From the NCBI GenBank assembly GCA_038087875.1, contig CM075977.1, positions 279,000,001 to 279,064,000 on the forward strand: 64,000 bases of DNA, written 5' to 3'. The position numbers were made by a program, and so were the translations under genes. The stretch comes from Malacoraja senta (taxonomy: Eukaryota). Of the stretch, positions 5,504 to 33,092 are shown in pieces (the first letter of the stretch is position 1; every line of letters starts with the position of its first letter). The notes under the pieces are model-generated. The model saw nothing but the letters and a program-made list of their open reading frames with translations. It searched no databases and was not told where the DNA came from.

Positions 5504-6169
5504 AGGGCCTGTCCCACACGTGTCCTTGGCACGCAAATTACGCGACCTCGTGGTCGCGTTGAGGCGCATGGGCATCGTATGGCCACGCGGGGCCGGTCCC
5601 ACTGAGAAGCGACATCGCGCGGGGCTCTGAAATTTTTGTAGGGAACGAAATCTTCGCGCGCCAACGGCCTGTCTGGTAACTGACGGCCAAAGTGGGACAG
5701 GCCCAAGACCCTGGCGTGACGCAACATCTCACCTCCAACAGCAGCAGAAGCAGGCAAACGATCGCCGAGCTCGGCCTGGGGCTCACGGCCGTTGCGGTCC
5801 GGATCTGCCCCCACTTCTACTCCCAGAACGGGGCCAAGAAAATTGAAGATAGACACAAAATGCTGGAGTAACTCAGCGGGACCGGCAGCATCTCTGGAGA
5901 GAAGCAATGGGTGACGTTTCGGGTCAAGACCCTTCTTTCAGACTGAAGAAGAGTCTCGACACGAAACGTCACCCATTGCTTCTCTCCAGAGATGCTGCCG
6001 GTCCCGCTGAGTTACTCCTGCATTTTGTGTCCATCTTCAAATGACACAGTGCTCCAGAGCTGTGCGGGAGAATGAAGTCGCGCGTGACCTTTGCGGGACC
6101 TTCGCACCTCAACACGACAACGAGGTCACGTAATGAGCGTGCCAAGGATACGTAAGTGGGACTGGGGCT
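5504..6169. mobile_element. PIF/Harbinger-like MITE with nested PLE hairpin
   Basis: agggcctgtcccac...aagtgggactggggct; ~65-bp imperfect TIRs; TAA/TTA flanks. Confidence 0.75.
5843..6040. repeat. PLE pLTR fold-back hairpin (~97-bp arms)
   Basis: ttgaagatagacacaaaatgctgg...tcagac then tgaagaagagtctcgac...ccatcttcaa; arms are near-exact reverse complements. Confidence 0.9.
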
Positions 6170-12065: not shown

Positions 12066-12256
12066 TTAAGAAGGAACTGCAGACGCTGGAACAATCGAAG
12101 GTAGACAAAAATGCTGGAGAAACTCAGCGGGTGAGGCAGCATCTATGGAGCGGAGGAATGGGTGACGTTTCGGGTCTCGACCCGAAACGTCACCCATTCC
12201 TTCGCTCCATAGATGCTGCCTCACCCGCTGAGTTTCTCTAGCATTTTTGTCGACCC
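12066..12256. mobile_element. PLE pLTR hairpin insertion with 13-bp TSD
   Basis: Arms 12104-12175 and 12180-12251 around loop CTCG; TSD agtattgtagtgc at 12053-12065 and 12257-12269. Confidence 0.9.
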
Positions 12257-16328: not shown

Positions 16329-16967
16329 TGATGGTAAGAAATAGGAAATAGGATGAATGAAAACCAAAATGTTTCAGATACTGGAAATATCATGGCTGGG
16401 TGATTTGCAGTAGAAATGGCCAGTTCTGATATGTCAGACAAAGCGAATCAGTTGAACGTGTGGATTTCAATATCGAGTTCGGAAGGCTGCAAAGTGGAGC
16501 TGTTTGAAATTGGAAAGGATGATTCCTGAATGCAGAGGTGGGAAGTGCGGAACTGGGGAATTTCTTTGCTCTGTCCAGGATGAGGAGCTGAAAGTAGAGG
16601 TGCAGGAAATGAAGAAATTGCAATCTATCATTTTAGATGATTCCCATAAGTCTATCAAGTATGGTTGAGAAAAACGGAAAATACTTCAGAGATGAGATAT
16701 TAGTGATCTGCTCTGAACCCTTTCCAGTTTGACAACATCTTTCCTGTAACATGGTGACCAAAGCTGAACACAATAAGGGTTTCGGCCCGAAACGTTGCCT
16801 ATTTCCTTCGCTCCATAGATGCTGCCTCACCCGCTGAGTTTCTCCAGCATTTTTGTGTACCTTCGATTTTCCACCATCTGCAGTTCCTTCTTAAACACAA
16901 TATTCTAAATGTGGCCTCACCAATGTCGTATACAACTGTAACATGACCTCCCAACATCTACACTCAA

Positions 16968-17191
16968 TGTGTAGGGAGGAACTGCAGATGCTGGTTTACA
17001 CCGTAGACTCAAAAAGCTGGAGTAACTCAGCGAGACAGGCAGCATCTCTGGACAGAAGGAGTGGGTGACATTTCAGGTCGAGACCCGAAACCGAGACCTG
17101 AAGATAGGTGTCGACCCAAAACGTCACCTGTTCCTTCTCGCCAGAGATGCTGCCTGTCCCGCTGAGTTCCTCCAGCATTTTGTGTCTATCT
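16968..17191. mobile_element. PLE pLTR hairpin insertion with ~11-bp TSD
   Basis: tctacactcaa at 16957-16967 and 17192-17202. Confidence 0.85.
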
Positions 17192-17597
17192 TCTACACTC
17201 AACACTGAAGCTTTGGCCATATTGGCCTTCATCAGTCACAGGTATTGAGTAGAGATGTTGGCAGGTCATGTTACAGTTAAAACTACCATTGTGGTGAAGA
17301 GTTTCCAATTTTGTTTCTTTACTTTTCAAACCATCTTGCAGTCTGACTCACATTCAGATATCCTGTAGACATCAGAACTTTCTGCTTTCCATCTGCCTCT
17401 TCTGAAAATCACAAACACATCCCCACTGTCTGCCCGTTCTAGGTCATTTCCATGACTTTTAAATTTGTGATGCCACAGTCTGAATACGAGGTATGGGGCA
17501 AACATTAATAAATCCACATTTACCCTGATAGCTCTCATCGGATCTTTAGAGCTTTCAAATAGGAGCAGTCGTGCAATATAGATCAGATGGCACTGGA

Positions 17598-17895
17598 GAG
17601 TCATAGAGTGATACAGTGTGGAGACAGGCCCTTTGGCCCAACTTGCCCACACCGGCGGCCAGCATGTCCCAGCTACACTAGTCCCACCTGCCAGCATTTG
17701 GTCCATATCCCTCCAAACCTGTCCTATCCATGTACCTGTCTAACTGCTTCTTAAATGATGGGATAGTCCCAGCCACAACTACCTCCTTTGGCAGCTTGTT
17801 CCATACACCCACCACCATCTGTGTGAAAAAGTTACCCGTCAGATTCCTATTAAATCTTTTCCCCTTCACCTTAAACCTATGTCCTCTGGTCCTCA
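17598..17895 (-). mobile_element. CR1 LINE 3' fragment
   Basis: ORF 17678..17896 RTRGHRFKVKGKRFNRNLTGNFFTQ..WNKLP..FKKQLDRYMD. Confidence 0.9.
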
Positions 17896-18058
17896 AAGTT
17901 GAACGTTGGTTCTCTTATTGGGGTAATTAGGTTGTTGGTACATTCACTATACATGGGCCAGACATCTAGTATCTTCAAAAGGCAATGAAGTAATTTCTAC
18001 CTTTCACATGCTCAAGGTGATTAAGTTTAAGTTTGTGATGCCACATTGATTAAGGTAA

Positions 18059-18559
18059 AGGGGCTGACCCACTTGGGCGACCTAATTGGCGAGTTTAGAA
18101 GAGTTTGAAAAAATGACATGTTGAAGACCTCCTTCGACTATGTTGAAGATCAGCTTCGACTATCTATGACTAACTTCGGGAAAATTGGACACCGAATATT
18201 GGAGAGTGAAGACGTTCTTCTTCGACCTCCCTTCGACTATGATGAAGACTATCTACGACTACCTTCGACTACCCTCGATTACCTACGACTAACATGTCGA
18301 CCTACTACAACTAAACCTACGAGTAAAAAAAGTATTGATTTTTTTCCATGGCGACCTTTTTTTACTCGCGGGCATTATTTAACATATTGAAAAAAACATC
18401 GCGACCTAGCTGAGGCCTCGAGTACACGGAGACCACTCTCGAGCATGAAGGAGAGTTACGAAGACCTCCAACGACCTCGCGTCGACCATGCTGCGAGTAT
18501 GAGTCGAGGGCAAACTCGCCAGAACTCGCGGATTAGGTCGCCCAAGTGGGACAGGCCCT
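18059..18559. mobile_element. PIF/Harbinger-like MITE, 501 bp, TAA TSD
   Basis: taa|aggggctgacccacttgggcgacctaat...attaggtcgcccaagtgggacaggccct|taa; internal cgact/cgacct motif array. Confidence 0.9.
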
Positions 18560-19537
18560 TAACACCAAGTGTATTGCAAGTTGTATTATTGTGGATGGAA
18601 GTTCTACTCTTGATGCAAAGTGTGGAGGCCAAATGTCAGGAAGCTGAGGAAAAACACAAATAGTACATGCAGAGAAATAGAAAGAAGTACAACATGTTAA
18701 TGAAGGCACTGAATTTACATATGTTTTGTAAGATAATGTAAAGAAATTGGGCTATATTTTGACATCTTCACTGGATATCCAAAAAAAGGGAATGTGAGTG
18801 GGAATTGGTAGGCAGAGCACATTATCCACTTGATGTGAAAGTCATAAGACTCGAGCTATTATGAAACTCTGGTCCTGTCTCCATGGTGTTATTAAGTTGG
18901 GTGGCCAAAGCGATATTCTCAGAGTTAATTAACAGTTCAAATCTGGAAAAGGGAGTGTCATATGGGTAGAACTATGGTTGGAGTGCTTGCTGTAAATGTT
19001 GGTCATCCAGGGTGGCAGAGGGGAAAGCCTATCCTTGCAGTTTGACGAAAAACAATTAGCTCAGTAAAGAGTCGGATTGTGTGGAAACAGGCCCTATTTT
19101 TAAAAATTAATGTTTAATGTTTTATGTATCATTCTTAACTGTCACTGTATGTCATGTTGTCACTTGCGGACGGAGCACCAAGGCAAATTCCTTGTATGTG
19201 AATACTTGGCCAATAAACTTATTCAATTCAATTCAATTCAATTCAATCAATTTTAAGCTTGCAGAGCCAAACACAGCAGTGTTCATCTGGACATCTCTTA
19301 ATACCGACACTAAACATAACTAATAACAGTGCATGTTACAATAATGTACCAAAAAGTTAGAACACATTGCACACTAATGTCTTAAAGATGCATTTGTACT
19401 TGTAGATACCACAGAGCTGGCAGCTTAGCAAAAAATGTATTTATATGAAACAGTTCTATTTGGAATGCACTGTCACAGAGATCACGGGACATTTTTGGAG
19501 AAAATTGGATAAACATTTCAAAGCATTTCTTAAGGAT

Positions 19538-19812
19538 GACACAGTGGCATTGCAGTAGAGTTGCTGCCTTACAGCGCCAGTGACCCGGGTTCAATCCTGA
19601 CTACGGGTGCTGTCTATGTGGAGTTTGCACGTTCTCCTTGTGACCGCATGGGTTTCCTCCAGGTGCTCTGGTTTCCTCTCACATCCCAAAGACGTGCAGG
19701 CTTGTAGGTTAATTGGCTTCTGTAAATTGTCCCTGGTGTGTAGGACACTGGTCGGTGCGGACCCGGTGGGCCGAAGGACCCTGTTTCCACACTGTATCTC
19801 TAAAAGAAACTA
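19538..19812 (+). mobile_element. HE1-like V-SINE (diverged)
   Basis: Degenerate A/B boxes, V-domain and tail. Confidence 0.8.
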
Positions 19813-20289
19813 ATTTGAAGCTGTAGGAATACTGGATTTTCTCAAGCATATGTCCACTACAGACTAATGAATTGAGCAGATCTCTGCTGTATGCAACATT
19901 TTGGTTTGGAAAAATCCTGGAAAATTAAAATTTTAAGATTCATAAAAAGGACTTTAGTCTAGGAATTGACTAATATCATTAGCAGCCTTTCAGCAACAAA
20001 TTGAAACCAAGTATGGTCCAAGTGGTTGCGGGAAAACCCATCATAAGCCACACTCCCGAGAACATACTAGAAACACGCAGGCGACAAAATATTGTAAATG
20101 CCAATTTAAATTCCCTTTCTGCATGGGAAAATTAATTGTATGCTGCACCGAAGATGATCTACTTCTATTGATGCTAGAAGATTGTATTACTGTCTCTGGC
20201 AGATAATGATACAATAGGGAATTTAACTCTGTTATTGTGCTGAGCTTAAACATGGCTCGAGACCAAGTTTCAATACATTGATTACATAT

Positions 20290-21240
20290 GACAAAGGAAG
20301 TGCATGCAAGCTTGACGAACCTGAAATAATACGAGCACCTTAACAAATACAGAGAAGTAGGAAAGAAACTAAACAAGGGATCAGGAGCACTAAAGGGGGC
20401 ATGAATTGTCCATGGCAAATACAATTAAAGAGTAATTTTAGATGTGCAGGATGGTAGCTAGGGAAGGGATAGGTCCACTCAAGGACAAAGGAGATCATTT
20501 ATATGTGAAGTCAGAGGAAGTAGGTGAGGTCCTTAAATCCAGGTTGCATCAGTATTCACCAAGGGGAAGGGCATGGATGATGGTGAGTTTAGGGAGAGGT
20601 AGGTCCATAAATCCATAAGTGATCGGAGCAGGATTAGGCCATTTGGCCCATCAAGTCTACTCCGCCATTCAATCATGGCTGATCTATCTTTCCCTCTCAA
20701 CCCCATTCTCCTGCCTTCTCCCCATAACACCGTGACATCCGTACTGATCAACTAAATGTTGTTATCAATGAGTCGTTGAGTGTCTTGAGAGACGTAAAAG
20801 TGGATAATACCCCAGGGCTGATTGAATCTATCCCAGGATACCGAGTGAAGCAACATAGAGATTGCTAGGGGCTTGATAGAGATCTTTGTAGTTTCTTTAA
20901 CACGTACAAGATGCTGGGAGATAGAATAGCCATTGGTGTACAAGAAATGATAGGCTGGTGGGCCTTACATCAGTAGAAGGGATAAGATTCTTAGTGATAG
21001 GATGTACTGATACATCTGAAAAAGCATGGGCCTATCGGAGAAAGTCATCATTGCTTTGTGTGGAGGAGATCTTGTCTCACAAATTGATTGGTTTCTTGAG
21101 AATTTGATAAAGATGACTGAGGGTAGGACAGTGAATGTTGTCTATATTGACCAAAGTAAAGCATTTAACAGGGTCCCTCATGTCCCAGAGGATTAAGTCA
21201 CTTGGGATACACAGTGAGTTGGTAAATTGAATCCACAGAT
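20290..21240 (+). mobile_element. Old CR1 ORF2 internal fragment with a nested minus-strand CR1 tail (~20600-20750)
   Basis: Degenerate RIGPLKD / FASVFT / SCLTNL / KAFxxVPH coding remnants. Confidence 0.7.
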
Positions 21241-21747
21241 CGACACAACATGCTGGAGTAACAGGGCGGGACAGGCAGCATCTCTGGAGAGAAGGAATGG
21301 GTGACGTTTCGGGTCAAGACCATTCTTCAGACTAGAAACGTCTTCCATTCCTTCTCTTCAGAGATGCTGATGGGTTACTCCAGCATTTGGTGCCTTTCTA
21401 GAGAATGGGATGCAGGCAGCTGAAATGTAGGCAACCCTATGTGGAGGGAATCTCTGGAAACTGGGAGTGCATCTCTGGATAGAAGGAACGTGTGACGTTT
21501 CAGGTCGAGAGCCTTCTTCAGACGCCTCGACTCGAAACGGTCACATTTCTTGGTTCTGTCAAGGGTGATTGAACATACTCATGTGGTGGTCTGAAATTAA
21601 AATCACTCGGGGGGGGGGGGGGGGACGGGGGCGGGGAACTGAAGGGAGGAACTGGCTGCAAGAGACTGAAGAGTTGCGAGTCACATTGCTGTGGGTCTGC
21701 AGTCACATATAAGGCAGAGGGAATAAAGAACAGACATCTTCCTATGG

Positions 21748-22056
21748 ATTATTATTATTAAATCGTTGAAAACATTAGCGACGCAGTGATGCTGGTTTCT
21801 GATGGGCACGGTGCCTTACGATGCTGTGTACGACAGTGATCGCAACTCCTACTGAAGTGTGGATGGCCGTTGGCTCACTAGGAGCTCATCCGCCCTTTGA
21901 CAGGTCTTGTTGTTGGTCCTGCTGGGGGTCCACAGCCCCCTCTTTACCTGGCAAACCAGGTGGGGGAGACGGTTTAGTTGCCGACTATCCGGCCATGGAG
22001 CAGGTAGCGCGGGATTACATGGTACCCGTGGCGGGGGGGACTCCCCCACGACCTGG
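21748..22056 (-). mobile_element. ~310-bp GC-rich SINE-like retroposon with (TAA)n tail, no Pol III boxes seen
   Basis: Sharp composition shift; (att)n at 21748-21760; flanking ctatg at 21742-21746 and 22057-22061. Confidence 0.55.
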
Positions 22057-22369
22057 CTATGTTAACACTTACGCTTCTCAAGTAGTTAATCTAAAAGTGT
22101 CTTTGATGATCTATTTCTACATGGAATTTTGGGAATGAAGAAACATTGGGGATTATCTTGGGGCGGTGCAACACTTATTTTCCAGGCACGATCCTGCTCA
22201 AGGCTCTGATGTGCAGATATTAGGGAACATCACTCTATGACTCTATAACATGGGGAGGTAAGATCATGTTCACATTTATATCAAGTGTATTACTTGCATA
22301 TGTAGTAATGAAAAGATGCTTTGTTCATCCGTGCCTGAAGAAGGCAACTTGGTATTCATAGGTCTCAAA

Positions 22370-22905
22370 GGTCTTTTACTGTCACGTGTACCAATTAATA
22401 TATAATGATATGCAAATTACCGTACAGCCATACGAAAAAAAAAGCAACAAGACACACAACTACATAAAAGTTAACATAAACATCCACCACAGCGGATTCC
22501 CCACATTCCTCACATTCTGACCAGAGACCGCCAGCTCTGTGACGTTAAGTCCGCAAGCACCCATGGTTGGAGCTCCGAGGTCGATCCCTGGCAAAGGGAT
22601 GGTGGACTCCGCGATGTTAAAGTCCCGTAGGCTCCCCGCGGTGGAGCTCTCAAAAGTCGGTCTCCAGCAGAGGCCGCCAACTCCTCGATGTTAGGCCGCA
22701 GTGCGGACGGAGATACGATACGGGAAAAAAAATCGCATCTCCGTCGAGGTAAGAGATTTTAAAACGTTTCCCCCAACCCCCCCCCCCCCCCACATAAAAC
22801 AAGCTAAAGAACACTAAAAACATACATTTAACACATAGTATTAAAACACAAAGAAGGAAGGGACAGACAGACTGTTGGCGAGGCAGCCATTGCTGGCACC
22901 ACCGG
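22370..22905 (-). mobile_element. GC-rich non-autonomous non-LTR element with Rex1/L2-like tail
   Basis: Tail ggtacacgtgacagtaaaagacc and body related to 32995-33395. Confidence 0.55.
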
Positions 22906-23092
22906 ATGAAACACAGGTCCTAATACCTATTTTTGATCCTGTACCAAACCAAGTTACCTCTGAACACCAATCCTAAACATCATGTAAATAAAATCCACAA
23001 GCATTGTCCCCAATCATTACTGCTTCTGCTCCTCAGGTCATAAGATCTCCCACTCTAGAGCACAACTATTCCAACCAAAACAAATCTTTCAA

Positions 23093-23820
23093 AGGTCGAC
23101 ACAAAATGCTGGAGTAACTCAGTGGGTCAGGCAGTATCTCTCGAGAAAAGGAATGGTGACGTTTTCGGATCAAGTCCTTTCTTCAGACTGAGAGTCAGGG
23201 GAGAGGGAAAATAGAGGTATGAAAAGGTACAGAATATATCAGTCGGCACTGATGACCCAGGGCCAACAATAGTCCATTGTTGGCCGTGGAGGAGATGATA
23301 ATGAAGCGATATGAACAGTGAAATTAGTAGGTAGACACAAAATACTGGAGAAACTCAGCAGGTCAGGCAGCATCTATGGAGAGAAGGAATTGGCGACGTT
23401 ACAGGTTGAGACCCTTCTTCTGAAATTAGTAGGACTAAGGCGGGGGGACAGGGGGACGGGGAGAGAGGGAACGCAAGGGTTACTTGAAATTAAGATATTA
23501 ATATTCATACCACTGAGGTGTAAGCTGCCCACGCGGAATATGAAGCGCTGTTCTACAATTTTTGTGTGGCCACAATCTGACAGTGGAGGAGGCCCAGGAT
23601 ACAAAGATCAGTGTGAGAATGGAAAGACGAGTTATAATATTTGGCAATCGGGAGATCACGTGGGCCAAAGTGGACTGAGTGTAGGTGTTCAGCGAAATGA
23701 TTGCCCAGACTGCTTTTGGTCTCGCCGATATACAAGAGTCCACATCGAGACCAACACGTATACAGTGTACAGTAGATGAGGTTGGAGGAGGTGCAAGTGA
23801 ACCTCTGCCTCACCTGAAAG
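23093..23820 (-). mobile_element. Penelope-like element 3' part with a nested pLTR fragment (23332-23420)
   Basis: ORF 23553..23813 FTCTSSNLIYC..LLYIGETK..FAEH; nested insert has TSD tgaaattagtagg at 23319-23331 and 23421-23433. Confidence 0.85.
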
Positions 23821-25157
23821 CCAAATATTCAGTGCACTTCGACTTAAAAGTGTTTTTCAGCAGAGGTATAATCCTCGGGTGCTTACTTACTATGGAGATT
23901 AAATGATCTGAACTAAAAGCTTTATTCCAGAAAAATATCATTATTTTAAACCCTATAAAAGAAAGGTTACAAGAACAATGGTGTGCAGTGCTGAGGAATA
24001 AATGGTTTCAGAATCACATTTTAAATCAAAGTTATGCTAGTGAGTGTGGATTAGACTCATCGTCTCAAGCGAAGATGAATATTGGCAGCGTCTCAGCTGA
24101 AATCACTTTCCAGGGAAGCAAAAAGGATGTAAATTGGCAGTCGAAAGATTGTTATAAAAATTAAAATATAATGGTGACATTCAATACTAAGGAAACCCCC
24201 AACATGCTGAAATCAGTGGAAAAGACAGATGGTCTTGCTGTAGTTTCCCATATGGTCTGTTCCCTTCTGGGCCAGTTGGAGGAAGTGCGGACTGAATGAG
24301 GGGGGAAATACGTGAAGAAAAAGAGGAATAATGTCTAGAATTGAATTTGTATCCAGTCCAAGGACACTATTTTCCCTCACCTCCATCAACGCGACATGAC
24401 AGTGTAAAAGAATGAAATTACTCCAGATGAAAACAAGTTTCGATATAAGTGCAGAATTTTATATATAATCTATTTTGGCTTTTTACAATTGGCATTTTGT
24501 GTTGCTTTTATAATTATCTGCGTGAAAACGCTGCGCATGTCCGAAAAATGATCAATTTAATTTAAAATGCTTTCTGCCATCGCTGCACCAATTTCACAGC
24601 ACCCTGAAGCAGAACGTTTCTCACAGGAACAGATTGTACTCGAGAGACATTCATTCACCAGAAGCAGGCAGTAGGTCACGGGTCCCAGCTGGTGATGGGG
24701 CCGTCGCTGGTGCAAGGCCCCCACTGTCGGGGTGGGTGAGGATTTCAGAGCGCTACTGGTCCTGTCAATTCAGTGTTAGCAATCCCTGGCTCAGCAACTC
24801 ATCAAACCCCCCCCCCCCCCCCCCACACACAACTTTATATGACCATCTGTTTCAGCTGCACAAATGTCAGTGAAATAGTCATTGGATACAGAAAGCGACG
24901 TTGCATCTGTTCTTTTAAATGTACTTTCATACTGTCATTACTAATAATATAAGAGAGAGTTAATAGATAGAGCTCTTGGGGCTAACGGAATCAAGGGATA
25001 TGGGGAGAAAGCAAGAACGGGGGACTGATTCCGGATGATCAGCTGACTCGAAGGGCCGAATGGCCTACTCCTGCACCTATTTTTTCGATGTTTCAAAGAG
25101 AAAGAGTAACTAACTGAAAGCAGTGCTATAAAGCAGATGGAATTCAAAGTTAACAAT

Positions 25158-25484
25158 GGGTGGCACGGTGGCGCAGCGGTAGAGTTGCTGCCTTACAGCG
25201 CTTGTAGCGCCGGAGACACGGGTTCGATCCCGACTACGGGTGCTGTCTGTATGGAGTTCTCCCCGTGACCTGCGTGGGTTTTCTCTGAGATCTTCGGTTT
25301 CCTCCCACAACCCAAAGACATACAGGTTTGTCTTTTTGCCTTGTAGGTTAATTGCCTTGGTATAAGTGTAAATTGTCCCTGGGGTGTGTAGGATAGTGTT
25401 AATGTGCGGGGATCGCTGTTCGGTGCGGACTCGGTGGGCGGAAGGGCCTGTTTCCGCGCTGTATCTCTAAACTAAACTAAACTA
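25158..25484 (+). mobile_element. HE1-like V-SINE
   Basis: A box tggcgcagcgg, B box gggttcgatcc, (taaac)n tail. Confidence 0.9.
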
Positions 25485-25629
25485 AGCTCCCCCCATCTCC
25501 TCTTTCCCATTCCATACCAAACTTCCTGTCCTTGGAAAACTGGAAGAACAACACCTCATATTCCGCTTGGGTAGTTTACAACCTAACAGTATAGACACTG
25601 AATTCTCAATTTCAATTAAGACCACGTTT

Positions 25630-26358
25630 ATTTGAGTGTTTGTCGGCACTGGGCCTGTACTCGCTGGAGTTTAGAAGAATGAGGGGGGACCTCATTGAAA
25701 TATACGGGATAGTGAAAGGCTTGGATAGAGTGGATGTGGAGAGGATGTTTCCACTAGTGGGAGAGTTTAGAACTAGAGGTCATAGCCTCAGAATTAAAGG
25801 ACGTTCCTTTAAGAAGATGAGGAGGGTGACGTCTGAACAAGGGTCCTATTCCTTCTCCTTTATAAAAGAGTATTGCCCTGATTTGCATGGATTACTTACT
25901 TTCTTATCTATTTAATGTTCATTTCTTTCAATAATGCAATGAAGGAAAATAATACAAAAATCATCTGCCACGTGATGCATGTTGAGGTTAAAATCACTTT
26001 TGCCCAGAGGGGCTGGCAAAGAGAAGAATGTCTTGAATAATCCTGGAAATGTACTCTTTGAAGGACATAATCAGAATTAAAAGACGTTCTTTTAGGAAGG
26101 AGATGAGGAGAAATGTCTTATTCAGAGGGTGGTGAATCTGTGGAATTCTTTGTCACAGAAGGCTGTAGAGGCCAAGTCAGTGGATATTTTTAAGCCAGAG
26201 ATAGATAGATTCTTGATTAGTACCTGTGTCATGGTTTATGGGGAGAAGGCAGGAGAATGAGGTTCAGAGGGAGAGATAGATCAGCCATGTTTGAATGGCG
26301 GAGTAGACCTGATGGGCCGAATGGCCTAATTCTACAATTCCTTATGACCTTATGACCA
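25630..26358 (+). mobile_element. CR1 3' fragment interrupted at ~25824-26067 by a duplicated block
   Basis: LGLYSLEFRRMRGDLIE..RTRGHSLRIKG; the ~40-bp CR1 segment tcagaattaaa...agatgaggag occurs on both sides of the insert. Confidence 0.8.
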
Positions 26359-27221
26359 CAGCTTTCCTCACCCTCTCTTTCTACTGCTGGCCCCACCATC
26401 CCCCCCAGCCCAGGTCACACATCTTTCCCCAGAATCCCAGCCACCCAGTTCCTTTTCCTTCCTCTGTACCCCCATCTCCCAGTCCCACATTTCCTTTTTA
26501 ACCCCTCTTTCCCCTCCCCATGTCCTTTTCTTTTACATTTACATGTCACTGCTTTTCTTTCTTAATCCAATGCCCCTTTGTCTCCTTTTCACATCAAGCC
26601 TCTGTCACTTACTCCACCCATCTGCAAACCACCCACCCACCCCACACCTGTCTCCACTTAGACACAAAATGTTGGGGTAACTCAGCGGGACAGGCAGCAT
26701 CTCTGGGGAGAAGGAAAGGGTGATGTTTCGGGTCAAGACCCTTCTTCAGACTGAGAGTCAGGGGAGAGGGAGACACAGAGATATGAAGAAGGGTCTCGAC
26801 CCCGAAACGACACCCCTTCCTTCTCTCCAGAGATGCTGCCTGTCCCGCTGAGTATCTCCAACATCTTATGTCTATCTTCAGTTTAATCCAGCATCTGCAG
26901 TTCCTTCCCACACATTGCGTCTACTTATCACATGCTGGGTTTTGCCTCATCCCCACCTCTCATATCCAGCTTCCTCTCCCCTATTCCAGTCATGCTGAAG
27001 AGGTGCTGAGTGATGCTCTACCTGGAGCTTTTCAGCGTACTACATCCAGACCCAGATCCAGGGTCCCCAATGTGAAACGCTGTCTGGCCATTCTCCCCGC
27101 CCCCTGATTTCCTCCAGCACTTGGAGGTTTTTTTTTGCTTTTTAATCCAGTTGCAACATTGATTCAGCAAAATTACTCCAGAAAACATAGAAGTGATTGA
27201 TCAAAACATGTGTCTCTCTTA

Positions 27222-27651
27222 AGCCTCTGTCCCACTTTCACGACCTAATTGGCGACCTCTGCCGAGTTTGCCCTTGACTCATACTCGCAGCATGGTCGTC
27301 ACAAGGTCGGAGGTTGTAGGAGTCTTCGGAACTCTTCCTCATGCTCGTGAGTGGTCGTAAAAATCGATACTTTTTACTCGTAGGTAGGTCGTAGTAGGTC
27401 GTGATGGTAGTCGTAGAGAGTCGTAAGTCGGTAACTGGCCCAAGAAAAAAATGCAAACATGATATCATTTTGTCATGTGATCATTTCCACTCGGAGCTAG
27501 TCGTAGTTGGTCTTAGGTGTGGAAGACTGAGGTCGAGGGGGGTCGTAGGAGGTCTTTTACTTCGGCGAGTCAACACGACCTTGACATTTTTTTCAACTCG
27601 TCTAGTGTCTTCCAAACTCGTGAATTAGGTCGTCCAAGTGGGACAGGCCTA
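27222..27651. mobile_element. Harbinger-like MITE related to 18059-18559, opposite orientation
   Basis: ctgtcccact...cgacctaatt / aattaggtcgtccaagtgggacaggcct; internal gtcgtag array. Confidence 0.8.
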
Positions 27652-27924
27652 TCTCTATCCCATTGTGAGCTACACGGGATGAATGCCTGGCTTGTTTGTT
27701 TATGCAAAACCATTCCAGACACGAACAGACGGGAATTCAATGAAGTCAACAATTCACAGATGTGGTTGGACTTTACCGCACAGTTGTTCCAGCTGTTCCA
27801 GCTTACAAAAAAAGTGACAAAAGCTGGAGGCGGAAAGGAAACAAAAGGGTGTCAGATAAGGAAAGAAGAGGATTGAAATGCAAAGCCTGAAGAGGAGAGC
27901 AAAAGATTGAAAGAACATTGCCAA

Positions 27925-28487
27925 TGGGGTTGCCAACTGTGCCGTATTAGCCGGGACATCCCGTATATTGGGCTCAATTGGTTTGTTCCATACGGGACCG
28001 CCCTTGTCCCGTATTTGACTGCTACTACTCGGGTCGAGGGGACTGTCGGGTCGGAGCGCCGCGTCTGGCCCCCGCCTCACCCGTCCCGACATAGTGCAGC
28101 CCATGGAGTGCAGCAGCAGCGCCTCGCCCGTGACCCCACCGGCAGCTGTCCGACCTTTGGACCTTCGCTTACTGCTGACACCACACCCCTCCTTCTCATG
28201 GCCGATCATCGGTTCATGAGTTGGATGGGGTTCCGGACTTTGCACGCGACATTGCGCGCCTGGGCCAAAACTCCTCAGCTGGCCCGCCAGCTGGGCTTTG
28301 TATGCAGTCCAGCACCCGGGCCAACTCATTATTCACCCAGCCATGCCGAGTCGGCCAAGGGTTGCCAACTTTCTCACTCCCAAATAAGGGACATTAGGCC
28401 AAAATAAGGGACAAATTCCCGACGGCAATTCGTCCCTTATTTTGACCTATTGTCCCTTATTTGGGAGTGAGAAAGTTGGCAACCCTA
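27925..28487. mobile_element. hAT-like non-autonomous element, 8-bp TSD
   Basis: tggggttgccaac...gttggcaacccta; TSD attgccaa (27917-27924) / attgcaaa (28488-28495); gggaca/tgtccc subterminal motifs. Confidence 0.8.
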
Positions 28488-30669
28488 ATTGCAAATACAG
28501 GCTGTCCCTGGTAAACAAACACCCGACTTATGGACACCCGTATACAAGTTCACACAAGTTCATAGGTTATAGGAGTAGAATTAGGCCATTCGGCCCATCG
28601 AGTCTGCTCCGCCATTCAGTCATGGCTGATCTCTGCCTCCTAATCCCATCTTCCTGCCTTCTCCCCGTAAACCACTTGACACCCGTTCTAATCGAGTATT
28701 TGTCCATCTCTGCCTTAAAGATGTCCACTAACTTGGCCTCCACAGCCCTCTGTGGCAATGAGTTCCACAATTTCACCACCCTCTGACTAAAATTATATAA
28801 GCTTCCATAACATTACATAAGTTCATTTCTACAAACAGCAGAACTAGTTTCCTATCTCATTCCACTTTGAATTTTTTTTCTTATTATCCTTGTGTGTCTT
28901 TGTTGCCATTCAATACAATACTGTGGCGGTATGGTTATCCTATCAAGTGATTTTTGTGTATTTTCCAACATCTGTAAGAGTAAAACCCATTTGCACTGGG
29001 GGCAGCCTATAGAAAAGACAGCTGATCCATGACACTTCAATGAATAATGCATTTGCATTCAATAAACTCACGCTTGCATGCTGAGCCGTCAAGACAGTCC
29101 CCAGTTTCTGCCACATTCTCAGCAGAATAGGAGCTGAAGAAAGGTCTCGACGTGAAACATGACCCATTCCTTCTCTCCAGAGATGCTGCCTGTCCCGCTG
29201 AGTTACGCCAGCAGCACTTTGTGTCTATCTTCTACACTCAACACTGAAGCTTTGGCCACATTGGCCTTCATCGGTCAGAGTATTGAGTTAGAGATGTTGG
29301 GAGGTCATGTTACAGTTAAAACTACCATTGTGGTGAAGAATTTACATTCTTTTCAATGCTTCTTAAGACTTTCCAATTTTGTTTCTCTGCTTTTCAAACC
29401 ATCTTGCAGTCTGACTCACATTCAGATTTCCTGTGGACATCAGAACTTTCTGCTTTCCTTCTGCCACTTCTGAAAATCACAAACTCATCCCCATTGTCTG
29501 CCCGTTCTAGGTCATTTCCATGATGTTCAGTTTATGATGTCACAATCCGAATATGAGGTATGGGGCAACCATTAATAAATCCACATTTACCCTGATAGCT
29601 CTCATAGGATCTTTAGATCTTTGGAGTAACTCAGCGGGACAGGCAGCATCTCTGGAGAGAAGAAATGGGCGGCGATTCAGGTCGAGACCCATCTTCAGAC
29701 CGGAAACGGTCTCGGTTTCGGATCTCGACCGGAAACATCACCCTTCATCCACTCCTTTTCTCCAGAGATGCTGTCTGTCTCGCTGAGTTACTCCAGCACG
29801 TTGTGTCTATCTTTAGTGTAAACCAGCATCTGTAGTTTCTCCCTTACACTGGTGTGGAAATGACCAGACTCACACATAGTGATTAGAATCCAGTCTTTTA
29901 TCACTTACCACTCAGGATGTATTCCCAGAATCAATGGTAGAAGGGATCATTGCAGCTTTACATAAAGGGCGTTTAGTTTAATTTAGTTTAGAGATACAGC
30001 ACGGAAGGCCCACCGAGTCCGCACCAACCAGCGATCCCTGCACATTGCACTTTATCTGCACCTATTGCACTTTATCCGCTTATTTATATGTATATTGAAC
30101 TGAACTGTTCTGTATTTTTGCTTACAATACTCTGTTGTGCTGCAGCAAGCAAGAATTTAATTGTCCTATCTGGGACACATGACAATAAAACTCTCTTGAC
30201 TTGACTTGACTCTTGACTTAACACTGTCCTACACACACTGGGGGACAATTTACACTTATACCAAGTCAATTAACCTACAAACCTGTACGTCTTTGGGAGA
30301 GTGGGAGGAAACCGAAGATCTCGGAGAAAACCACGCAGAGAAAACCACGGGGAGAACGTACAAACTCCACACAGGCAAGCACCCGTAGTCAGGATTGAAG
30401 CTAGGTCTCTGGCGCAGTTAAAGCAGTAGCTCTACTGCTACTCCACCATGCCGCCCTTGCCTGTTGCTGAGAGTACTGTCGAGTTGGGACAACGGAAGCC
30501 CACCAGTAAATCACCCTACAGCCCAGCCTGTGGTAGCCAGCATTGGCCATGAAGAGCAAAGAGTGGAACTGCTTGGTGGTGAGATGTGGAGCTCAGGACT
30601 GCATCCTGGACAACTCAAGGTGACGAAGAGATCATAGGTCCCAGGCGTTCTGGCAAAACGTTGAAACTT

Positions 30670-31035: not shown

Positions 31036-32047
31036 TGTGGAGCAGGTACTGCCAGTGTCCAGCAATGCCCACATTCATTGTGCCGGCCAGGATGCAGCCC
31101 ACAGCTCCACGTCTCAGCTCTGGCACCCACACAGCTTACACACGACCAAGAACCATGAGCCCTCATGGGCACCAGCATCGCTGAGACACCAAGCCATCAG
31201 ATGGTCATTATTTTGGAAAACTCCAACAGAGGGCAGCGGTTAGTACGAGGAACCCAGCGCCCAAGTTCCTCGCACAACAACAGCGGGAAGAGCCAATTTC
31301 CTGGCACAGCAGTGCGCAGACCTAATGATGCCCCTTTCAAAGTATTGGATTATTATGCTCACCTATACCGAGCTGCCAGGGATAACTTTGTTTTGTTTGC
31401 TATCCAGTCAAATCACACCACATCTGTAGCAAGGAACTGCAGATGCTGGTTTGCACTGTAGACACAAAATGCCGGAGGAACTCAGTGGGACAGGCAGCAT
31501 CTCTGGAGAGAAGGAAGGGCTCTGAAGAAGGGTCTCGACCCAAAATGTCAGCCATTTCTTCTCTCCAGAGATGCTGACAGTCCCGCTGAGTTACTCCAGC
31601 TTTTTGTGTCCGATCATACTACACACGAGTACAATATAGACGCAAAAAGCTGGAATAACTCAGCGGGACAGGCAGCATCTCAGGAGGGAAGGAATGGGTG
31701 ACGTTTTGGGTCGAGACCGTTCTTTAGATCTCGATCTCGACCCGAAACATCCCCCATTTCTGCTCTCCAGAGATGCTGACAGTCCCGCTGAGTTACACCA
31801 GCAATTTGTGTCAAATCATACTGCACACGAATGCAATCAAACCCCACACAAATTGAACAGGTTGTGCGAAGAGAAAAATCAATGCAGAGTGCAGAATATT
31901 ATCTTCCAGCGACAGAGACCATGCAGATTAAAAGAAAAATGCAAAGCCGCAACGTAGATTGGGAGGTCGGGAATAATCCTCCGCTTGTGAGAGTTCCGTT
32001 CAAGAGCATTCTTCTGTATGACAGGATAAGTTAGAAGAGGGAGTGAC

Positions 32048-32476: not shown

Positions 32477-33092
32477 TGGCTTTTTACAGTGCAGGGATTA
32501 TTAAGATAATTGGGAACATGCTGATTATCCTTAGTCCTCTGAGGAAGAGAGTAGGGGGGTACAGACTTTTTAGACTGAAGGACTAAATATGCAGTAAAGG
32601 ATCAGTGCTCTGTCAGGCAGTGATAAGCCGGATAGCAATAAAGTCAGAAATTATCTTCAATGCAAAGTATTTATTAAGCAATTCAATGGACAAAATACTG
32701 AAAGGATATGAAGTTCGCTTACGTGTTTCCCGAATTGGAGATTATAAATTATATGAATTGGAGAGAGGTTGCTCAAACTTGGATAGACACAAAAATGCTG
32801 GAGCAACTCAGCGGGACAGGCAGCATCTCTGGAGAGAAGGAATGGGTGACATTTCGGGTCGAGACCCTTCTTCAGACTAGAAAGGTCACCCATTCCTTCT
32901 CTCCAGAGACGCTGCCTGTCCCGCTGAGTTACTCCAGCATTTTGCGTCTATCTTCGGTGTAAACCAGCATCTGCGGTCCCTTACTATAAATTAAGTTCAA
33001 GTTCAAGTTACATTTATTGTCACATGCACCAATTGGTAGAGTGAGATTTGAGTTACCATACAGCCATAAGAATAGAAAATAGCATAATACAC

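What the first reader, a model, noticed from the sequence alone, without database searches (positions are those of the whole stretch)
16968..29849. Host DNA copied 12 kb away, starting at a hammerhead core and capped by an inverted copy of the donor hairpin
Seen: 17098-17554 and 29134-29621 are direct copies (about 90% by eye). Each comprises the pLTR arm from CTGAAGA, a CR1 scrap and ~270 bp of otherwise unique DNA; the 17-kb copy lacks ~28 bp. Directly after it, 29622-29849 is the reverse complement of the specific hairpin at 16968-17191, sharing its idiosyncratic apex (ccgaaaccgagacc) and arm variants (gcgagacag, ggagtgg). The 17-kb hairpin keeps its TSD (tctacactcaa), so it is the likely donor. 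Established: PLE insertions typically show direct-plus-inverted pLTR arrangements, and PLE-associated hammerheads have been proposed to mark RNAs for mobilisation in trans. Inference: read-through RNA from a dead pLTR hairpin was reverse transcribed and reinserted locally, i.e. ribozyme-anchored transduction of host DNA.
Basis: partly seen in the sequence, partly recalled or inferred. Interest (0 to 1): 0.8.

Follow-up and report, generated by a model that had tools for sequence, protein, structure and literature searches.

The report
Hairpin retroelement copied with neighbouring DNA
A dead Penelope-type hairpin repeat and about 360 bases of the DNA beside it were copied once to a spot 12 kb away as two head-to-head pieces, most likely by the element's own reverse-transcription machinery and not by ribozyme cutting; it is an old, decayed rearrangement of modest interest.

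Summary
17098-17555 is repeated at 29134-29621. The non-repeat part is 93.4% identical, the repeat-arm part 86%, and the 17-kb copy lacks 29 nt. It is followed by 29622-29849, the reverse complement of the hairpin at 16968-17175 (87% plus six indels). That piece shares an apex block found in no other of about 40 arms in the window.

The 17-kb locus is the donor. It keeps both 11-nt target duplications and an intact LINE context.

The "ribozyme-anchored read-through" reading is only partly supported:
- The copy starts at the hairpin apex. That is the usual 5' boundary of arms in this family, and it lies 28 nt upstream of the predicted hammerhead cut.
- The donor cores are mutated.

The second piece ends at the family's canonical 37-nt "tail" terminus. 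The whole insert therefore looks like two cDNAs made from a minus-strand transcript that entered the hairpin from the flank. One ran from the tail and one from the apex loop, as in twin priming or the both-strand priming shown for Penelope-like elements.

DNA-level template switching remains a serious rival: the copy is 12 kb away in cis and has no target duplication. A genome-wide copy count and an empty site could not be checked. The scan noted a similar host-DNA capture on Penelope tails elsewhere in this genome (s1-206897, unchecked).

The parts
16957..16967 (.). Left copy of the 11-nt target-site duplication (TCTACACTCAA) of the donor hairpin
   Evidence: Read directly. Identical to 17192-17202.
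16968..17003 (-). Donor hairpin: 36-nt 'tail' (sense on the minus strand), ending at the family's canonical 3' terminus ...CCCTACACA
   Evidence: The terminus lines up with about 14 other tail-bearing copies. The tail is mostly unpaired in the RNA fold.
17004..17097 (-). Donor hairpin: direct arm plus an idiosyncratic apex block. In sense, the CTGAAGA box is replaced by CTCGGTTTCGG.
   Evidence: Stem 17004-17085 pairs with 17107-17188 (I11). The apex motif is unique to this copy and 29709-29721.
17098..17191 (+). Donor hairpin: inverted arm without a tail. It reads CTGAAGA... on the plus strand. This arm is the first part of the duplicated stretch.
   Evidence: Its outer end lies at the family's tail-less end position.
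17192..17202 (.). Right copy of the donor TSD, included in the duplication
17203..17279 (+). LINE (CR1-like) coding scrap. It is the inverted 5' piece of a twin-primed LINE insertion, and is co-duplicated.
   Evidence: Translation and the 34-nt overlap with 16934-16967 on the minus strand.
17280..17555 (+). Non-repeat DNA, co-duplicated. The right breakpoint lies at 17555/17556.
   Evidence: It has a single partner in the window. Homology ends at 17555.
29134..29230 (+). Copy of the donor's inverted arm, starting at the apex (CTGAAGA). The 344 nt to its left are unique in the window.
29231..29621 (+). Copy of the donor TSD, the LINE scrap and the non-repeat DNA. It retains 29 nt (about 29340-29368) that the donor has since lost.
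   Evidence: 93.4% identity
29622..29698 (+). Second piece: inverted arm of the hairpin copy, with its outer end truncated by about 16 nt. It overlaps the first piece by 77 nt of donor sequence, in the opposite orientation.
   Evidence: I12 and I15; three-way distances.
29699..29721 (+). Complex apex (ACCGGAAACG + GTCTCGGTTTCGG), shared with the donor apart from a 10-nt indel
29722..29812 (+). Direct arm of the hairpin copy. It carries the donor-specific variants CCACTCC and CTGTCTCGC.
29813..29849 (+). 37-nt tail of the hairpin copy, ending at the canonical family terminus (...CCCTTACAC). The DNA that follows is unique in the window until about 29966.

Best explanation
One reverse-transcriptase-mediated event copied a minus-strand transcript that began in the DNA to the right of the donor hairpin (at or beyond 17555). 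The transcript ran through the hairpin to the hairpin's own 3' tail.

As in every hairpin of this family, two cDNAs were made and joined head to head:
- One started at the tail (now 29849) and ran back through the direct arm, the apex and 77 nt of the inverted arm. This is 29622-29849.
- The other started in the single-stranded apex loop of the folded RNA and ran to the RNA's 5' end. This is 29134-29621, so it sits inverted relative to the first.

The result is upstream (5') flank transduction with a twin-priming-type inversion. It is not 3' read-through and not a ribozyme-cut end.

Shown:
- the two pieces, their orientation and their 77-nt overlap;
- the donor polarity;
- the canonical tail end;
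- the family anatomy.

Inferred:
- the RNA intermediate;
- priming at the apex loop, because the normal tail-less start site is buried in the stem;
- the enzyme (a Penelope-like RT/EN acting in trans).
For: 1. Family anatomy. Each copy is an inverted 5'-truncated arm without a tail, then a variable apex, then a direct arm with a roughly 37-nt tail on one side only. TSDs are 11-12 nt, seen at the donor and at the 12073 and 9546 copies. This matches published PLE insertion structure (PMC8557442). It also matches the two RT start sites 30-40 nt apart, and the extension of both target strands, shown for a PLE protein in vitro (PMC11167929).
2. The second piece ends within 1 nt of the canonical tail terminus.
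3. The apex block is shared only by the donor and the copy. There are also 2-3 shared point variants, and the tail-bearing arms are reciprocal nearest neighbours.
4. Hairpin-versus-copy divergence (12.8%) equals that of the co-duplicated arm (13.8%; Fisher p=0.85). The three arm copies are equidistant (12/77, 12/77, 10/77). This fits one event.
5. The minus-strand RNA folds into a -155 kcal/mol hairpin (z=-11.8). The apex loop and the tail are unpaired, while the tail-less start site lies inside the stem.
6. The same topology occurs next door. There a LINE scrap has an inverted 5' piece that overlaps its direct piece by 34 nt. This is the twin-priming pattern described in PMC2912911.
7. An unchecked note from this scan (s1-206897) reports host exon sequence fused upstream of PLE tails in inverted copies elsewhere in this genome.
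Against: - No target-site duplication flanks 29134-29849, or 29622-29849 alone. Canonical copies of the family have one.
- The copy lies only 12 kb from its source in cis.
- The start of the first piece is not one of the family's RT start sites, so apex priming is an ad hoc step.
- The 13 nt after the tail are 9/13 identical to the donor's flank, the highest of 105 flank pairs. The copy may therefore run slightly past the natural terminus.
- The arm copies are no closer to each other than to unrelated family members. Descent of the first piece's arm from the donor rests on contiguity alone.
- No autonomous PLE ORF is present in the window.
Confidence: 0.45

Rival explanations
1. DNA-level template switching or repair synthesis (FoSTeS/MMBIR-like). 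A broken or stalled 3' end at 29133 switched to the donor at the exposed apex of the palindrome and copied 17098-17555. It then switched strands and copied 17175 back to about 16968 (or 16955), and finally rejoined at 29850. No RNA and no element enzyme are involved. The palindrome matters only as a fragile, single-strand-exposing structure.
For: - Donor and acceptor are 12 kb apart on one chromosome and in the same order. That is typical of replicative template switching.
- There is no TSD and no poly(A).
- The two pieces overlap in donor coordinates in opposite orientations (I12/I15).
- The right acceptor flank and the donor's left flank show 9/13 homeology, which could have guided the last switch.
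- One breakpoint lies at a hairpin apex.
Against: - The last copied base coincides, within 1 nt, with the family's natural tail terminus as defined by about 14 other copies. That would be a coincidence of roughly 1 in 100 for a random breakpoint.
- The other two junctions have only 0-1 nt of microhomology.
- The product has exactly the inverted-plus-direct, one-sided-tail layout that the element's RT makes elsewhere.
- Similarity of 8/13 also occurs between the flanks of unrelated copies, so the 9/13 match is weak.
Confidence: 0.3
2. A plus-strand RNA began at the CTGAAGA box of the dead arm (17098) and read through into the flank as far as 17555. It was reverse transcribed, and the inverted hairpin copy was added by a template jump between this RNA and a hairpin RNA or cDNA.
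For: - Most arms of the family, solo or in hairpins, end within 0-3 nt of CTGAAGA. A family-specific 5' boundary therefore exists at that point.
- A single cDNA that first copied the hairpin from its tail and then jumped to the 3' end of such an RNA would give the observed minus strand.
Against: - The boundary is 28 nt upstream of the predicted hammerhead cut (after GAAACGTC, 17126). Ribozyme cleavage cannot create it (PMC4209133).
- The donor arm's core is mutated (AAAAC). The copy's cleavage triplet is also lost.
- Hammerhead mutants insert normally in vitro, and no reads end at the cut site in vivo (PMC11167929).
- PLE RT starts internally at its own sites. It would not normally copy sequence that lies 3' of them (PMC11167929).
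- This version needs two RNAs from opposite strands.
Confidence: 0.12
3. Two unrelated events. 29622-29849 is an ordinary, independent insertion of a hairpin from the same subfamily as the donor. A separate segmental duplication then happened to end against it.
For: - Hairpins can share apex types without being neighbours. Those at 21237-21400 and 32782-32996 both have CTTCAGAC-TAGAAA. A subfamily carrying the CCGAAACCGAGAC apex could therefore exist genome-wide.
Against: - It needs two transfers from the same 600-bp donor, or a rare subfamily member, to land at exactly one point.
- The hairpin copy lacks the outer 16 nt of its inverted arm and has no TSD.
- Its divergence from the donor equals that of the co-duplicated arm.
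- No other arm of about 40 in the window has the apex block.
Confidence: 0.08

Closest known systems
Penelope-like element (PLE) complex insertions: an inverted 5'-truncated copy next to a direct copy, with a 30-40-bp 'tail' at one end (Craig et al. 2021, PMC8557442; Frangieh et al. 2024, PMC11167929)
   Same: - Head-to-head inverted and direct pieces.
- A one-sided 36-37-nt tail.
- A minimal hammerhead-type motif about 95-130 nt upstream of the two end positions.
- The copy's second piece ends at the tail terminus.
   Different: - The inverted piece consists mostly of non-element host DNA.
- It starts at the apex of a pre-existing hairpin, not at an RT start site.
- There is no TSD.
- The template was a dead hairpin copy, not a pLTR-ORF transcript.
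LINE-1 twin priming (5' inversion) and 5' transduction (twin priming described in PMC2912911; 5' transduction from my own knowledge)
   Same: - A direct 3' piece that ends at the element's 3' terminus.
- A 5' piece that is inverted.
- Upstream flanking DNA carried along.
- Little microhomology at the inversion junction.
- A LINE scrap beside the donor shows the same layout with a 34-nt overlap.
   Different: - No poly(A) and no TSD.
- A 77-nt overlap between the pieces.
- The enzyme would be a GIY-YIG/telomerase-like PLE protein.
Replicative template switching at palindromes (FoSTeS/MMBIR-type templated insertions; my own knowledge)
   Same: - A short insert templated from a site 12 kb away in cis.
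- Pieces in both orientations.
- A breakpoint at a palindrome centre.
   Different: - One end coincides with a retroelement's canonical terminus.
- Microhomology is 0-1 nt at two of the three junctions.
Retrozymes / hammerhead-processed RNAs (PMC4209133; bioRxiv 10.64898/2026.07.22.740005)
   Same: The repeat carries the CUGAAGA - GC-rich helix II - GAAAC-GUC signature of minimal PLE hammerheads.
   Different: - There is no tandem arrangement.
- The copy boundary is not at the cleavage site.
- The cores at this locus are mutated.
- No Rfam model matches.

Membership tests
PLE-derived hairpin insertion (the repeat family itself) | An inverted 5'-truncated copy lies directly next to a direct copy | tested here: met
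   Eight or more hairpins in the window show this layout, each with its own apex position.
PLE-derived hairpin insertion (the repeat family itself) | A 30-40-bp tail extension at one end only | tested here: met
   The direct arm runs about 37 nt past the end position of the inverted arm, in the donor, the copy and other hairpins.
PLE-derived hairpin insertion (the repeat family itself) | A hammerhead ribozyme motif in the repeated part | tested here: inconclusive
   The consensus has CTGAAGA-GGGTCTCGACCC-GAAAC-GTC in 28 arms. No Rfam hammerhead model reaches E<=1 on the arms or the gathering score. Helix I and activity were not verified.
PLE-derived hairpin insertion (the repeat family itself) | Linked to an RT plus GIY-YIG endonuclease ORF of a PLE | tested here: not met
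   The ten longest ORFs of the window have no Pfam hit. The autonomous partner, if any, lies elsewhere in the genome.
Canonical insertion of that family, applied to the 29-kb structure | An 11-12-nt target-site duplication at both ends | tested here: not met
   No direct repeat flanks 29134-29849 or 29622-29849. The donor hairpin and the copies at 12073 and 9546 do have one.
Canonical insertion of that family, applied to the 29-kb structure | Both outer ends lie at the family's two RT start positions | tested here: not met
   The right end is at the tail terminus. The left end is at the apex/CTGAAGA boundary, not at the tail-less start position.
   The copy begins at 17098, the first base of the CTGAAGA box. 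The predicted cut lies after 17126.
   The plus-strand donor arm has AAAAC in place of GAAAC and an altered helix II. In the minus-strand arm the CTGAAGA box is replaced.
Twin-priming-type 5' inversion with 5' transduction | The direct piece ends at the element's 3' terminus. The inverted piece covers the adjoining upstream part of the same template. | tested here: met
   The pieces correspond to donor 16968-17175 (direct in sense) and 17098-17555 (inverted), with a 77-nt overlap.
Twin-priming-type 5' inversion with 5' transduction | An RNA intermediate | not testable with these tools
   There is no intron, poly(A) or transcript data. It needs RNA-seq or an outgroup empty site.
Replicative template switching (FoSTeS/MMBIR) | Microhomology at every junction | tested here: inconclusive
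   0 nt at 29133/29134 and 1 nt at 29621/29622. There is 9/13 imperfect homeology at 29849/29850, but four unrelated flank pairs also reach 8/13.

The most novel reading that the evidence does not exclude
Dead PLE hairpins still carry a usable RT start site in their single-stranded tail. Any transcript that runs into one from the tail-less side can then be reverse transcribed in trans. The upstream host DNA is carried along and laid down as an inverted piece primed from the hairpin's apex loop. This would be a general, previously undescribed route of 5' flank transduction that seeds small duplications in elasmobranch genomes. It could be local if nascent transcripts are the templates.
Probability: 0.2. 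Interest if true: 0.6.

Novelty: new variant of a known kind. Interest (0 to 1): 0.38.

Why it matters
If the RT route is right, this is a natural product of two properties recently shown for a PLE protein in vitro. These are internal initiation at fixed sites and extension of both target strands. Here they would be acting on a structured, non-canonical template. It would show that PLE machinery can move ordinary host DNA lying upstream of a dead element copy. That would give a concrete, countable genomic signature for a census in PLE-rich genomes. The signature is host DNA in inverted order, abutting a tail-bearing hairpin that shares its donor's apex. If the DNA route is right, the case is one more example of palindromic repeats guiding template switching. 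Either way the locus is old (about 7% divergence in the flank), non-coding and decayed, so its importance is mechanistic and not functional.

Tried and rejected
- Rfam scans found no hammerhead on the arms. I ran an E-value scan of 15-32 kb and a gathering-score scan of the whole window. They gave only sub-threshold miRNA-like hits to the hairpins and one chance HH9 hit at E=0.9.
- I looked for homology beyond the breakpoints. None lies left of 17098/29134 or right of 17555. After 29849 there is only the weak 9/13 match.
- I tried to rebuild an empty site from other copies of the acceptor flanks. Both flanks are unique in the window.
- I tested whether the core might be an exon. The minus-strand ORF 17326-17706 is broken in the copy, so it is not coding.
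- Pfam scans of the ten longest ORFs found no PLE RT/EN and nothing else.
- The metagenome scan for the apex motif gave three unrelated, bacterial-looking contigs, so it was uninformative.
- A lookup of the core sequence among the scan's notes was blank.
- I used the three arm copies to test common descent. They are equidistant, but no closer than random family members. That comparison is compatible with one event without proving it.
- I considered and rejected two DNA models: cruciform resolution to hairpin-capped ends followed by replication, and SDSA from a pre-existing hairpin. Both predict the flank in the opposite orientation or in two copies.


Full report
**What is there**

The window is repeat-rich vertebrate DNA. 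Its most abundant short repeat is an arm of about 95-130 nt, found roughly 40 times. It often occurs as hairpins.

Printing every tail-bearing copy in one orientation gives a consistent anatomy:
- An inverted arm whose outer end lies at a fixed position (about TAGACACAAAATGC).
- An apex whose position and sequence differ from copy to copy.
- A direct arm that runs about 37 nt further, to a fixed terminus (...CCTACAC[A]).

Several copies have 11-12-nt target-site duplications: the 17-kb hairpin, and the copies at 12073 and 9546.

The arm consensus carries CTGAAGA, a GC-rich helix II, GAAAC and GTC in 28 arms. This is the layout of the minimal hammerheads of Penelope-like elements (PMC4209133). 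No Rfam model recognises it.

The anatomy matches what is published for PLE insertions: an inverted 5'-truncated copy beside a direct one, with a 30-40-bp tail at one end only (PMC8557442). A PLE protein has been shown to extend both target strands. It starts reverse transcription at two internal sites a tail-length apart, about 110-120 nt downstream of the hammerhead (PMC11167929). No PLE ORF is present in the window. Family membership therefore rests on structure.

**The observation**

It is confirmed.
- 17098-17555 recurs at 29134-29621.
- From the target-site duplication onward the two copies are 93.4% identical (24 substitutions in 361 nt).
- A 29-nt stretch is present only at 29 kb. It is bounded by AAGA on both sides, which reads as a later microhomology deletion in the 17-kb copy.
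- The arm part is only 86.2% identical.
- The non-repeat core has no other match in the window.
- Directly after it, 29622-29849 is the reverse complement of 16968-17175: 87.2% identical, with six indels.

The two hairpins are specifically related.
- They share an 11-13-nt apex block that replaces the CTGAAGA box of the tail-bearing arm. No other arm has it.
- They share GGAGTGG, found in 2 of 22 arms.
- They share GCGAGACAG, found in 3 of 15 arms.
- Their tail-bearing arms are reciprocal nearest neighbours.

The apex at 29 kb has 10 more bases. Its first part resembles an apex type seen in other hairpins. I read that as the older state, with the 17-kb copy having lost them.

**Which copy is the donor**

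The 17-kb locus is the donor.
- It has both copies of the 11-nt duplication.
- The hairpin there interrupts a coherent older structure. This is a LINE (CR1-like) coding scrap whose 5' piece is inverted and overlaps the direct piece by 34 nt.
- The 29-kb locus carries only one copy of the duplication, only the right-hand LINE piece, and no left flank.

**Polarity and the ribozyme claim**

The tail of the donor hairpin lies at its left end, so the element's sense strand there is the minus strand. The copied flank is therefore upstream of the element. The hairpin copy at 29 kb is in sense on the plus strand and ends at the canonical tail terminus.

The first copied base, 17098, is the first base of the CTGAAGA box of the tail-less arm. 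A minimal type-I hammerhead cuts after GAAAC-GUC, here after 17126, which is 28 nt further on. In the anole element the cut is likewise downstream of stem II (PMC11167929).

So the breakpoint is the apex of the hairpin, not a self-cleaved end. It is also the point where most arms of the family stop, within 0-3 nt of CTGAAGA. That boundary is therefore a property of the family, whatever causes it.

Both donor cores are mutated. Hammerhead mutants insert normally in vitro (PMC11167929).

**Most likely mechanism (inference)**

In donor coordinates the insert is two pieces. One is 16968-17175, in sense orientation and ending at the tail. The other is 17098-17555, inverted upstream of it. The pieces share 77 nt.

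That is the topology of twin priming (PMC2912911), and of every hairpin in this family. One cDNA is primed from each target strand on one RNA, and the two are joined at their 3' ends.

The template would be a minus-strand transcript entering the hairpin from the right. That RNA folds into a -155 kcal/mol hairpin (z = -11.8).
- The tail and the apex loop are unpaired.
- The normal tail-less start position is buried in the stem.
- This gives a reason why the second cDNA would start in the apex loop.

The age data fit one event.
- The hairpin copy and the co-duplicated arm have diverged from the donor equally (12.8% vs 13.8%; p = 0.85).
- The three copies of the shared arm are equidistant.
- Both arm figures are about twice the flank's divergence (p = 0.015-0.03). 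The arms also carry about five times the CpG density.

A caution applies here. The arm copies are no closer to one another than to unrelated family members. Only the apex and the tail-bearing arm carry specific signal.

**The main rival**

The main rival is DNA-level template switching. Three things speak for it:
- The source lies only 12 kb away in cis.
- There is no target-site duplication.
- The 13 nt after the tail are 9/13 identical to the donor's left flank, the highest of 105 flank pairs.

Three things speak against it:
- One end coincides with the canonical tail terminus.
- The layout is typical of the element.
- Post-tail flanks are T/G-biased in general, and four unrelated pairs reach 8/13.

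It still keeps this rival at about 0.3.

Two independent events are unlikely.

**What could not be done**

No skate genome or relative is searchable with these tools. The copy number of the core and of the apex variant, and the empty site, remain untested. A metagenome scan for the apex motif found only unrelated contigs.

An unchecked note of this scan (s1-206897) describes host exon sequence fused upstream of PLE tails in inverted copies elsewhere in this genome. If that is correct, it is a non-local precedent for the RT route.

**Verdict**

This is a real, old, non-coding rearrangement. So are the donor assignment and the link to PLE-type inverted-plus-direct structure. The ribozyme anchoring and the read-through polarity are not supported.

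Noticed in passing
window 16898-16967 (-) and 17203-17279 (+): Two pieces of one LINE (CR1-like) coding scrap lie head to head and share a 34-nt overlap (31/34 identical). The left piece translates to IECRCWEVMLQLYTTLVRPHLEY. This is a twin-priming-type 5' inversion. The donor hairpin is inserted exactly at its inversion junction.
   Followed up: partly
window 16778-16897 (+): A solo arm of a second subfamily (CATAGATGCTGCCTCACC type, tail ending CTTCTTAAACA) is inserted into the same LINE scrap. Across it the LINE reading frame continues (...YCVQLWSPCYRKDVV).
   Followed up: partly
window 21237-21400 and 32782-32996: Two hairpins share the same apex junction (CTTCAGAC-TAGAAA). Either some hairpins propagate as whole units or the junction re-forms at a preferred point.
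   Followed up: no
15 tail termini across the window (e.g. 4451, 9572, 26914, 36813, 47294): The DNA just after the tail is T/G-biased, with T at +1 in 10 of 15 and TTG[A/C]G in three copies. This suggests a weak target preference or microhomology-guided priming.
   Followed up: partly
window 28358-28486: A near-perfect palindrome with 64-nt arms (94% complementary, 1 nt apart), MITE-like. It gives sub-threshold hits to plant miRNA precursor models.
   Followed up: no
window 31415-31812: A cluster of two or three hairpin copies packed end to end, possibly nested or serial insertions.
   Followed up: no
window 5850-6038: A hairpin whose two arms share the same private variant (GCAATGG). This is as expected if both arms were copied from one template RNA. 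The donor hairpin's arms do not share their private variants.
   Followed up: no
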